Positions 49,052 through 63,787 of a stretch of 64,000 nucleotides of DNA are shown in pieces. The notes under the pieces were generated by a model that worked only from the letters and a program-made list of their open reading frames with translations, did no database searches and was not told the origin of the DNA. Each line of letters opens with the position of its first letter. Positions within the stretch are counted from its first letter, which is position 1. The stretch covers positions 84,072,001 to 84,136,000 of the forward strand of contig NC_088800.1 in NCBI RefSeq assembly GCF_011386835.1, in the 5' to 3' direction. The position numbers and the translations under genes were made by a program. The DNA is from Chrysemys picta bellii (lineage: Eukaryota).

Positions 49052-62265
<13,214 letters not shown>

Positions 62266-62712
62266 GGTCCAGGGCGGCGGGGCTGCCCGGCGGCGGGGTT
62301 ACATAAGCGCCAGCCCCGGCCGCCCCAGCCCCTTTCCCTTTCCTCCCTGACCCGCCGCCAGCCAATCGCGCCGCCGCGCGCAGGACCGGCCCTCCCCGGC
62401 GGGGCGTGCGAGCCTGGCCGGGCTGGGCTGCAGGGAGGCACCGCTCCGGATGGGTGGAAGTCCCCGCGGGGCTCCTCTCTCCCGCGCCGCCCCAGGCGCC
62501 CTGGTGGCCCCGGCCCCCCGCACGCTCAGAAACGCGGCTGGCTCCTTGGGCACGTCCCTCGGTCCCGTTCCCACGGTCCTTGCACGCCCGCGGGTTGCAC
62601 GGCTGCCCCATTGGCGGGGGGACCCAGCCGTGCACCGACCCAGCAGCCGCCGCTACCTAAGGAGGGGTGGGGGGGAGAGGCTTTGCCTGCTTAACTCACT
62701 TCTCTTGTGATT

Positions 62713-62732
62713 GTGTGTGTGTGTGTGTGTGT
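62713..62732. repeat. (GT)10 microsatellite
   Basis: Direct reading. Confidence 0.95.
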
Positions 62733-62890
62733 CTTGTCTCCAATTTGTTCACCTTGCTGCTGATTGCATGAGGGACGAGGGGCCCTGTGCAACTTGCCCT
62801 GGTGCATTTTATTCCTTCAGACGGTTGGGGTAAGCCATAAAGTCCCCATTGCACAGCATTGGAGATGAAGGTAATAATGCGCTGATAAGC

Positions 62891-62911
62891 GGGGGGGGGG
62901 GGGGGGGGGGG
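62891..62911. repeat. G21 homopolymer upstream of the FAHD1 ORF
   Basis: Direct reading. Confidence 0.9.
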
Positions 62912-63115
62912 CTGGCAATGCATTACATTCGCTGATTGCAAGGGGGAAAAGCGGGGGTGGAGCCCTGTAGTCCTATACAACTCTATGGTTTTCAGCTGAG
63001 AGCAAGTGGATTGGTGCAGAAAGAAATGTCTCCTCTGGCCAGCCGTAGCTGTCAGATGAGTGTTCTGCCCTGGTCACAGTTCATCAGCTGACACACAGGG
63101 AAGTTTGCAGGGCTC

Positions 63116-63787
63116 ATGGCTTCGTCCAAGTCTTTGGCCAAGTTCTGGGAATGGGGCAGAAACATCATCTGCGTAGGGAGGAATTATGCAGAGCATGCCC
63201 AGGAGCTGAAAAATGCTGTCCCCAGCGAGCCCCTTTTTTTCCTGAAGCCTTCCTCAGCCTATGTCCGGGAAGGAGACCCCATTATCAAGCCTTACTACTG
63301 CAACAATCTGCACCATGAGGTGGAGCTGGGAGTGGTGATTGGGAAGAAAGCCCATGCTGTCTCCCAGAAGTCTGCTATGGACTACGTGGCAGGTTATGCC
63401 CTGTGCTTGGACATGACAGCCAGGGACACCCAAGCTGAGTGCAAGAAAAAGGGCCTTCCTTGGACCTTAGCCAAAGGCTTCAATACGTCGTGTCCGGTGA
63501 GTGATTTTGTGCCCAAGGAAAAGATTCCAGACCCACACAAGCTGCAGATCTGGCTCAAGGTAAATGGTGAGCTGAGGCAAGAAGGGGAAACCTCTTCTAT
63601 GATTTTCTCTATCCCCTACATCATCAGCTATATCAGTGAAATCATCACCCTGGAAGAAGGGGATCTGATTTTGACAGGTAGCCCCAAAGGTGTTTCTGCT
63701 GTCCAGGAGCACGATGAGATACAAGCTGGAATACACGGCATCCTCAGTATGCAGTTTAAGGTGGCACAGCAATCGCGCCAATCTTGA
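63116..63787 (+). CDS. FAHD1: Fumarylacetoacetate hydrolase domain-containing protein 1 (oxaloacetate decarboxylase/tautomerase, acylpyruvase), 223 aa, uninterrupted ORF
   Basis: FWEWGRNIICVGRNYAEH, FLKP, HHEVELG, LDMTARD, PWTLAK, GDLILTG motifs; head-to-head with HAGH as in human. Confidence 0.97.
   Translation: MASSKSLAKFWEWGRNIICVGRNYAEHAQELKNAVPSEPLFFLKPSSAYVREGDPIIKPYYCNNLHHEVELGVVIGKKAHAVSQKSAMDYVAGYALCLDMTARDTQAECKKKGLPWTLAKGFNTSCPVSDFVPKEKIPDPHKLQIWLKVNGELRQEGETSSMIFSIPYIISYISEIITLEEGDLILTGSPKGVSAVQEHDEIQAGIHGILSMQFKVAQQSRQS

What the first reader, a model, noticed from the sequence alone, without database searches (positions are those of the whole stretch)
63680..63682. FAHD1 naturally carries Ser at the human Thr192 active-site position
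Seen: codon 189 is AGC, giving LTGSPKGVS instead of the FAH-family LTGTPKGVG. The other catalytic and metal residues (H27, E30, E68, E70, D99, R103, Q106, K120; human numbering +3) are intact. Recalled from the literature: engineered human T192S was described as a catalytically enhanced oxaloacetate-decarboxylase variant and was used to lower mitochondrial ROS in cells. Inference: this lineage may have fixed a naturally altered or hyperactive FAHD1, affecting oxaloacetate/SDH control and ROS, which is of interest for long-lived, anoxia-tolerant animals. The nearby Gly-to-Ser change may be coupled.
Basis: partly seen in the sequence, partly recalled or inferred. Interest (0 to 1): 0.72.

Follow-up and report, generated by a model that had tools for sequence, protein, structure and literature searches.

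The report
Turtle FAHD1 with active-site serine
The turtle's FAHD1 enzyme really has serine where humans have threonine 192, but most birds and lizards have it too, long-lived crocodilians do not, and it is already published, so it is no turtle longevity adaptation.

Summary
Window 63116-63787 (+) is an intact single-exon FAHD1 gene of 223 codons. Codon 189 (63680-63682) is AGC, Ser, and aligns to human Thr192. All eight named catalytic and metal residues are present. Contigs from four public runs in four studies show the same codon.

The interpretation does not hold as a turtle-specific story.
- Ser occurs in 13 of 13 turtles sampled, anoxia-intolerant tortoises and sea turtles included.
- It also occurs in 56 of 64 birds and 23 of 33 squamates, among them short-lived quail, finches and anoles.
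- All 4 crocodilians, every fish and amphibian, and most mammals keep Thr.
- The site flipped at least 13 times in sauropsids.
- Two unrelated Ser codon classes are used. Turtles, one gecko and one cordylid have AGC. Birds, Anolis and a snake have TCN.

The "coupled" Gly-to-Ser change at codon 194 is not a turtle change, because fish and squamates also have Ser there. It also shows no association with codon 189.

Heberle et al. 2024 already reported natural T192S homologues in birds and turtles and linked them to longevity. A 2025 follow-up says T192S and the inactive K123A variant lowered ROS comparably.

Verdict: real, ordinary and already known. Whether the turtle enzyme is faster is untested. 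This scan's earlier notes did not mention it.

The parts
63116..63787 (+). FAHD1 coding sequence: single exon, 223 codons plus stop
   Evidence: ORF. PF01557 E 8e-65. Human FAHD1 6fog E 4e-114. 96-98% identical to annotated turtle FAHD1 proteins.
63089..63091 (+). In-frame TGA upstream, which makes the ATG at 63116 the first possible start
   Evidence: Read from the sequence.
63680..63682 (+). Codon 189, AGC = Ser, at the column of human Thr192
   Evidence: Unchanged in contigs of 4 runs. The softshell Pelodiscus has the same AGC codon.
63695..63697 (+). Codon 194, TCT = Ser (human Gly197). Fish and squamates share this Ser; it is not a turtle change.
   Evidence: Column counts.
63194..63205 (+). 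Lid dyad His27 and Glu30 (human H30, E33)
63317..63325 (+). Metal ligands Glu68 and Glu70 (human E71, E73)
63410..63433 (+). Asp99, Arg103 and Gln106 (human D102, R106, Q109)
63434..63436 (+). Ala107, directly after the catalytic Gln. Nearly restricted to turtles: 12 of 13 turtles, while 206 of 242 other vertebrates have Glu or Asp.
63473..63475 (+). Lys120 (human K123)

Best explanation
This is the ordinary, intact orthologue of the mitochondrial enzyme FAHD1 (Mg-dependent oxaloacetate decarboxylase, tautomerase and acylpyruvase) in a cryptodiran turtle closest to Emys. The Ser at the Thr192 column keeps the hydroxyl and loses only a methyl group. It is an old, fixed state shared by all sampled turtles. 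It dates at least to the common ancestor of softshells and hard-shelled cryptodires, and possibly to the sauropsid ancestor. It belongs to a Thr/Ser toggle that is frequent across reptiles and birds. By analogy with engineered human T192S, the turtle enzyme may turn over oxaloacetate somewhat faster than the human one; this step is inferred, not shown. Even so, the residue is not a specific adaptation to turtle longevity or anoxia tolerance.
For: Gene identity and intact active site. Codon confirmed in independent runs. Distribution: Testudines 13/13 Ser; Crocodylia 4/4 Thr; Squamata 23 Ser and 10 Thr; birds 56 Ser and 8 Thr. Outside the sauropsid clade there are 104 Thr and 3 Ser, the Ser being two colugos and a porcupine. 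There are at least 13 state changes on a hand-typed species tree and 12 on the gene tree. Ser codons fall into two classes: AGC in the window, Pelodiscus, Eublepharis and Hemicordylus; TCN in Rhea, Gallus, hoatzin, Aegotheles, Anolis and Thamnophis. These classes are two nucleotide steps apart, so Ser is not one shared event. There is no association with column 194. The literature already reports natural T192S in birds and turtles.
Against: Thr is strongly conserved across the wider family, at 133 of 144 aligned representatives at the 50% identity level, with Ser in only 4. Ser is therefore not a freely tolerated residue everywhere. The toggle is concentrated in sauropsids: 9 changes in 6.3 units of gene-tree length against 3 in 9.3 units outside (binomial p 0.017). 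That hints at a clade-wide change in constraint or selection rather than pure neutrality. No kinetic data exist for any reptile FAHD1. Side-necked turtles (Pleurodira) and the tuatara were not sampled.
Confidence: 0.85

Rival explanations
1. Ser189 is a turtle adaptation. A naturally hyperactive FAHD1 drains mitochondrial oxaloacetate, relieves succinate dehydrogenase control and lowers ROS, contributing to longevity and anoxia tolerance. 2024.
For: Ser is fixed in 13 of 13 turtles, with a shared AGC codon in two deeply split turtle lineages. Human T192S is reported to have enhanced oxaloacetate decarboxylase activity. Turtles also carry a nearly turtle-only Ala directly after the catalytic Gln.
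Against: The same Ser occurs in quail, zebra finch, anoles, fence lizards and snakes. It is absent from long-lived crocodilians, elephants and humans. Within turtles it does not separate anoxia-tolerant emydids from tortoises or sea turtles. In the cell experiments, wild-type enzyme lowered ROS more than T192S, and inactive K123A was said to behave comparably. The size of the T192S effect is not given in the main text.
Confidence: 0.06
2. Ser is favoured by selection across Sauropsida as a whole, for example in connection with uric-acid-based nitrogen excretion or a different TCA-cycle set-point. It was reached convergently by two codon routes, with occasional reversions.
For: There are two Ser codon classes, AGC and TCN. 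Ser appears in 123 of 148 tips inside the sauropsid clade against 3 of 107 outside, and there is an excess of changes per unit of tree length in sauropsids. Heberle et al. note that the carriers are uricotelic.
Against: Many reversions to Thr exist: tinamou, ducks and geese, swifts and hummingbirds, thrush, dipper, skinks, lacertids, several geckos, Varanus and one colubrid. This pattern looks more like near-neutral toggling. The enrichment test is weak (p 0.017, on a noisy 223-column gene tree with uneven sampling). No functional data exist.
Confidence: 0.12
3. The Ser codon is a sequencing or assembly error.
For: None found.
Against: Contigs from four runs in four studies, including individuals that differ elsewhere, all carry AGC. 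Twelve other turtle species have Ser at the same column.
Confidence: 0.01

Closest known systems
Human FAHD1 (PDB 6FOG, 6FOH, 1SAW)
   Same: Same length class, same FAA_hydrolase fold family, single coding exon, and all named catalytic and metal residues. The match has E 4e-114 over residues 1-218.
   Different: Thr192 is Ser, Gly197 is Ser, and Asp110 is Ala. Identity to mammalian orthologues is about 70-76%.
Engineered human FAHD1-T192S (Heberle et al. 2024, PMC11035622; Pfarl et al. 2025, PMC12749303)
   Same: The same residue exchange at the same column.
   Different: It is a single change in the human background. The turtle protein differs at roughly a quarter of its positions, so the kinetic effect cannot simply be transferred.
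Natural T192S homologues in birds and turtles, as reported by Heberle et al. 2024 (section 'The FAHD1 variant T192S', Fig. S4) and apparently by Wilhelmy et al. 2025 in Gene Reports (not held here)
   Same: This window is one of those natural carriers.
   Different: This analysis adds four points. The state is sauropsid-wide. It is absent from crocodilians. It flips repeatedly. It is encoded by two codon classes, so the published longevity correlation is confounded by phylogeny.
Cg1458, the oxaloacetate decarboxylase of Corynebacterium glutamicum (PDB 4DBF, 4DBH)
   Same: It is a member of the FAH superfamily. According to Heberle et al. it has Ser258 at the column of human Thr192.
   Different: It is a distant relative (E 4e-23). 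The Ser258 alignment was taken from the paper and not re-derived here.

Membership tests
FAHD1 (FAH-domain protein 1, oxaloacetate decarboxylase / tautomerase / acylpyruvase) | FAA_hydrolase C-terminal domain covering the whole protein | tested here: met
   PF01557 at 218.9 bits against a cut-off of 23.9, residues 17-216.
FAHD1 (FAH-domain protein 1, oxaloacetate decarboxylase / tautomerase / acylpyruvase) | Metal ligands Glu71, Glu73 and Asp102 (human numbering) | tested here: met
   E68, E70 and D99 are present.
FAHD1 (FAH-domain protein 1, oxaloacetate decarboxylase / tautomerase / acylpyruvase) | Lid dyad His30/Glu33, plus Arg106, Gln109 and Lys123 | tested here: met
   H27, E30, R103, Q106 and K120 are present. 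Their roles are as described in PMC7116474.
FAHD1 (FAH-domain protein 1, oxaloacetate decarboxylase / tautomerase / acylpyruvase) | Orthology to vertebrate FAHD1 rather than FAHD2 or FAH | tested here: met
   The best matches are annotated FAHD1 proteins of turtles (96-98%), squamates, birds and mammals. The protein sits inside the sauropsid clade of the gene tree.
FAHD1 (FAH-domain protein 1, oxaloacetate decarboxylase / tautomerase / acylpyruvase) | Conserved neighbourhood next to HAGH | tested here: inconclusive
   HAGH lies head-to-head upstream in hoatzin and rhea. Ten minus-strand ORFs upstream in the window gave no Pfam hit; short exons would be missed.
FAHD1 (FAH-domain protein 1, oxaloacetate decarboxylase / tautomerase / acylpyruvase) | Oxaloacetate decarboxylase or acylpyruvase activity, and mitochondrial location | not testable with these tools
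   This needs enzyme assays and localisation experiments.
Natural T192S-type FAHD1 | Ser at the column of human Thr192 | tested here: met
Natural T192S-type FAHD1 | Higher oxaloacetate decarboxylase activity than the Thr form | not testable with these tools
   This is reported only for the human mutant, in supplementary figures that are not held here.

The most novel reading that the evidence does not exclude
The Thr-to-Ser exchange at the FAHD1 active site was reached repeatedly, by two different codon routes, almost only within Sauropsida. In turtles it sits together with a nearly turtle-only Ala directly after the catalytic Gln. This could mark a clade-wide, selected shift in how reptile and bird mitochondria handle oxaloacetate, with turtles carrying an extra layer.
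Probability: 0.12. Interest if true: 0.45.

Novelty: already known. Interest (0 to 1): 0.15.

Why it matters
If natural Ser forms of FAHD1 were truly hyperactive and tied to low ROS, they would offer a simple molecular handle on mitochondrial ageing biology. The distribution mapped here argues against that. The residue follows phylogeny (reptiles and birds except crocodilians), not lifespan or anoxia tolerance. The published longevity correlation therefore needs a phylogenetically controlled test before anyone builds on it. The useful by-products are a list of independent Ser/Thr sister pairs for such a test and the more turtle-restricted Ala107 next to the catalytic Gln.

Tried and rejected
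Sequencing error is rejected.

Coupling between Ser189 and Ser194 is rejected by the cross-table.

A single shared origin of Ser in sauropsids is rejected at the codon level. Amino-acid parsimony alone would place Ser at the sauropsid root. Counting by hand on the sampled codons, nucleotide parsimony is ambiguous between an ancestral AGC and repeated ACC-to-AGC gains.

I looked for the size of the T192S kinetic effect. It is not in the main text, and no supplement is held.

I looked for the structural role of Thr192. Weiss et al. 2018 (PMC7610682) and Wilhelmy et al. 2025 (Gene Reports) are not held. The FEBS J review does not mention T192.

Checking synteny with HAGH through Pfam scans of upstream ORFs gave nothing.

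The scan's earlier notes hold nothing on FAHD1.

Structure prediction was not run. A 3D model without coordinates or ligand would not show the contacts of residue 189.

Full report
**What is in the window**

The last kilobase of the window holds one uninterrupted ORF, 63116..63787 on the + strand, with 223 codons. A TGA lies in frame nine codons upstream (63089-63091), so the ATG at 63116 is the first possible start.

The protein is a full-length FAA_hydrolase domain protein (PF01557, 218.9 bits). It aligns end to end with human FAHD1 (PDB 6fog, 6foh, 1saw) at E 4e-114. Window residue n aligns to human residue n+3. Its nearest named relatives are turtle proteins annotated as FAHD1: the Gopherus cluster at 96%, and Emys orbicularis with 219 of 223 residues identical. 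The window therefore comes from a cryptodiran turtle close to Emys, in line with the scan's earlier notes on this window.

**The observation**

Codon 189 (63680-63682) is AGC, giving LTGSPKGVS where human FAHD1 has LTGTPKGVG. H27, E30, E68, E70, D99, R103, Q106 and K120 are all present.

Logan contigs from four runs in four studies, under two organism labels, cover the codon without any differing letter. Run X9 is a different individual of organism A. It differs only at 63526 and 63542, both synonymous. Contigs can hide rare alleles, but an assembly error is excluded, and twelve other turtle species show the same residue.

Contigs in two runs that are guessed to be RNA begin shortly upstream of the start codon, at 63090 and 63023. 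This is compatible with expression but does not prove it.

**Where Ser occurs**

I tabulated this column in the 120 best hits of two database searches and in listed members of eight 90% clusters.

| Group | Ser | Thr |
|---|---|---|
| Testudines | 13 | 0 |
| Crocodylia | 0 | 4 |
| Squamata | 23 | 10 |
| Birds | 56 | 8 |
| All 114 named sauropsid species | 92 | 22 |

- The turtles include sea turtles, softshells, Carettochelys, tortoises, Chelydra, Emys and Pangshura.
- The birds with Thr are a tinamou, Anser and Anas, a swift and two hummingbirds, Turdus and Cinclus.
- Outside the sauropsid clade of the gene tree there are 104 Thr and 3 Ser. The Ser carriers are two colugos and the North American porcupine.
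- Every named fish, amphibian and the coelacanth has Thr.

The Ser carriers include short-lived species such as Japanese quail, zebra finch, green anole and fence lizard. Crocodilians, elephant and human carry Thr. The lifespans are general knowledge and were not computed here. Within turtles the residue does not separate anoxia-tolerant freshwater turtles from tortoises or sea turtles.

**How often the site changed**

Fitch parsimony on a species tree typed from the accepted phylogeny needs at least 12 changes inside Sauropsida plus one on its stem. A FastTree gene tree built without this column needs 12 changes in all. Nine of these fall inside the sauropsid clade, in 6.3 units of branch length. 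Three fall outside, in 9.3 units (binomial p 0.017). This is a rough figure, given a 223-column gene tree and uneven sampling.

**Codons**

The codons show that the Ser states are not one inherited event.

| Codon | Residue | Species |
|---|---|---|
| AGC | Ser | the window, Pelodiscus, Eublepharis (gecko), Hemicordylus (cordylid) |
| TCT | Ser | Rhea, Gallus, hoatzin, Aegotheles |
| TCG | Ser | Anolis |
| TCC | Ser | Thamnophis |
| ACC | Thr | Alligator, Podarcis |
| ACG | Thr | tinamou |

AGC and TCN are two steps apart and are normally linked through ACN (Thr). Amino-acid parsimony puts Ser at the sauropsid root. Counted by hand on the sampled codons, nucleotide parsimony is ambiguous between an ancestral AGC and several ACC-to-AGC gains.

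Either way the turtle Ser is at least as old as the split between softshells and hard-shelled cryptodires. It is not a recent lineage-specific event. Side-necked turtles and the tuatara were not sampled.

**The neighbouring "Gly to Ser" change**

Column 194 is Ser in ray-finned fishes, squamates and turtles. It is Ala in amphibians, the coelacanth and crocodilians, and Gly in mammals and birds. The cross-table of columns 189 and 194 has all combinations in large numbers: S+G 78, T+G 61, T+S 45, S+S 43. There is no coupling, and this is not a turtle substitution.

**Family context**

Among the 150 best representatives at the 50% identity level, from a library of 1.8 billion proteins, the column is Thr in 133 and Ser in 4. 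Thr is therefore strongly conserved across the FAHD1-like branch, and Ser is a rare but natural alternative that keeps the hydroxyl. This conservation, together with the concentration of flips in sauropsids, is the one aspect that a purely neutral reading does not fully explain.

**Literature**

Heberle et al. 2024 (PMC11035622) derived T192S from the Ser258 of the fast bacterial enzyme Cg1458. They report higher oxaloacetate decarboxylase activity for the human mutant in supplementary figures, which are not held here.

They already state that natural T192S homologues occur in long-lived birds and turtles, in uricotelic animals, and that they correlate with the lifespan-to-weight ratio.

In the same paper both wild type and T192S lowered ROS, wild type more strongly. 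The difference faded after normalising to mitochondrial content.

Pfarl et al. 2025 (PMC12749303) call T192S a naturally occurring variant. They say that T192S and the inactive K123A gave comparable ROS effects. [quoted passage not shown]

**Mechanism, with its status**

- Shown: an intact FAHD1 with a complete catalytic set and Ser at the Thr192 column.
- Established elsewhere: FAHD1 is a Mg-dependent mitochondrial oxaloacetate decarboxylase, tautomerase and acylpyruvase, with the residue roles summarised in PMC7116474 and PMC8398924.
- Inferred: Ser keeps the hydroxyl of the conserved TG(T/S)P loop and removes one methyl group. In the human background this raises turnover. The same may hold in the turtle enzyme, but roughly a quarter of the residues differ, so the size and even the direction of the effect are unknown.
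- Not supported: any specific tie to turtle longevity, SDH control, ROS or anoxia tolerance.

**Verdict**

The feature is already known and of low interest.

The small additions made here are the phylogenetic map, the two codon classes, the lack of coupling with column 194, and three residues that really are almost turtle-only: K58, A107 directly after the catalytic Gln, and Q213.

No human contig was handled.

Noticed in passing
window 63434-63436 (codon 107, GCT): Ala lies directly after the catalytic Gln106 (human Q109). 12 of 13 turtles have Ala and Carettochelys keeps Asp, while 206 of 242 other vertebrate FAHD1 proteins have Glu or Asp. This is much more turtle-restricted than Ser189.
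   Followed up: partly
window 63287-63289 (codon 58, AAG) and 63752-63754 (codon 213, CAG): Lys58 and Gln213 are found in all 13 turtles and in fewer than 1% of other vertebrate FAHD1 proteins. Their function is unknown.
   Followed up: partly
column 191 of the FAHD1 alignment (window 63686-63688): In birds, 7 of the 8 species that reverted to Thr at column 189 have Glu or Ala instead of Lys two residues later (TPEGV, TPAGV). Most Ser birds have SPKGV. This may be a local epistatic pairing and was not tested with independent contrasts.
   Followed up: no
window 63526 and 63542: Two synonymous differences (ATT to ATA Ile137, CTG to TTG Leu143) appear in run X9, an independent individual with the same organism label as the probable source of the assembly.
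   Followed up: yes
window 62000-62912: A very G+C-rich stretch with long spurious ORFs on both strands and a G run at about 62900-62912 lies just upstream of FAHD1. It looks like a CpG-island promoter. In hoatzin and rhea, HAGH starts head-to-head about 200-300 bases upstream of FAHD1 (L002, L011). I could not show this for the window.
   Followed up: partly
mammalian FAHD1 hits P0093, P0145, P0111: The two colugos (Galeopterus, Cynocephalus) and the porcupine Erethizon are the only mammals in the sample with Ser at the Thr192 column. These are two further independent gains.
   Followed up: no
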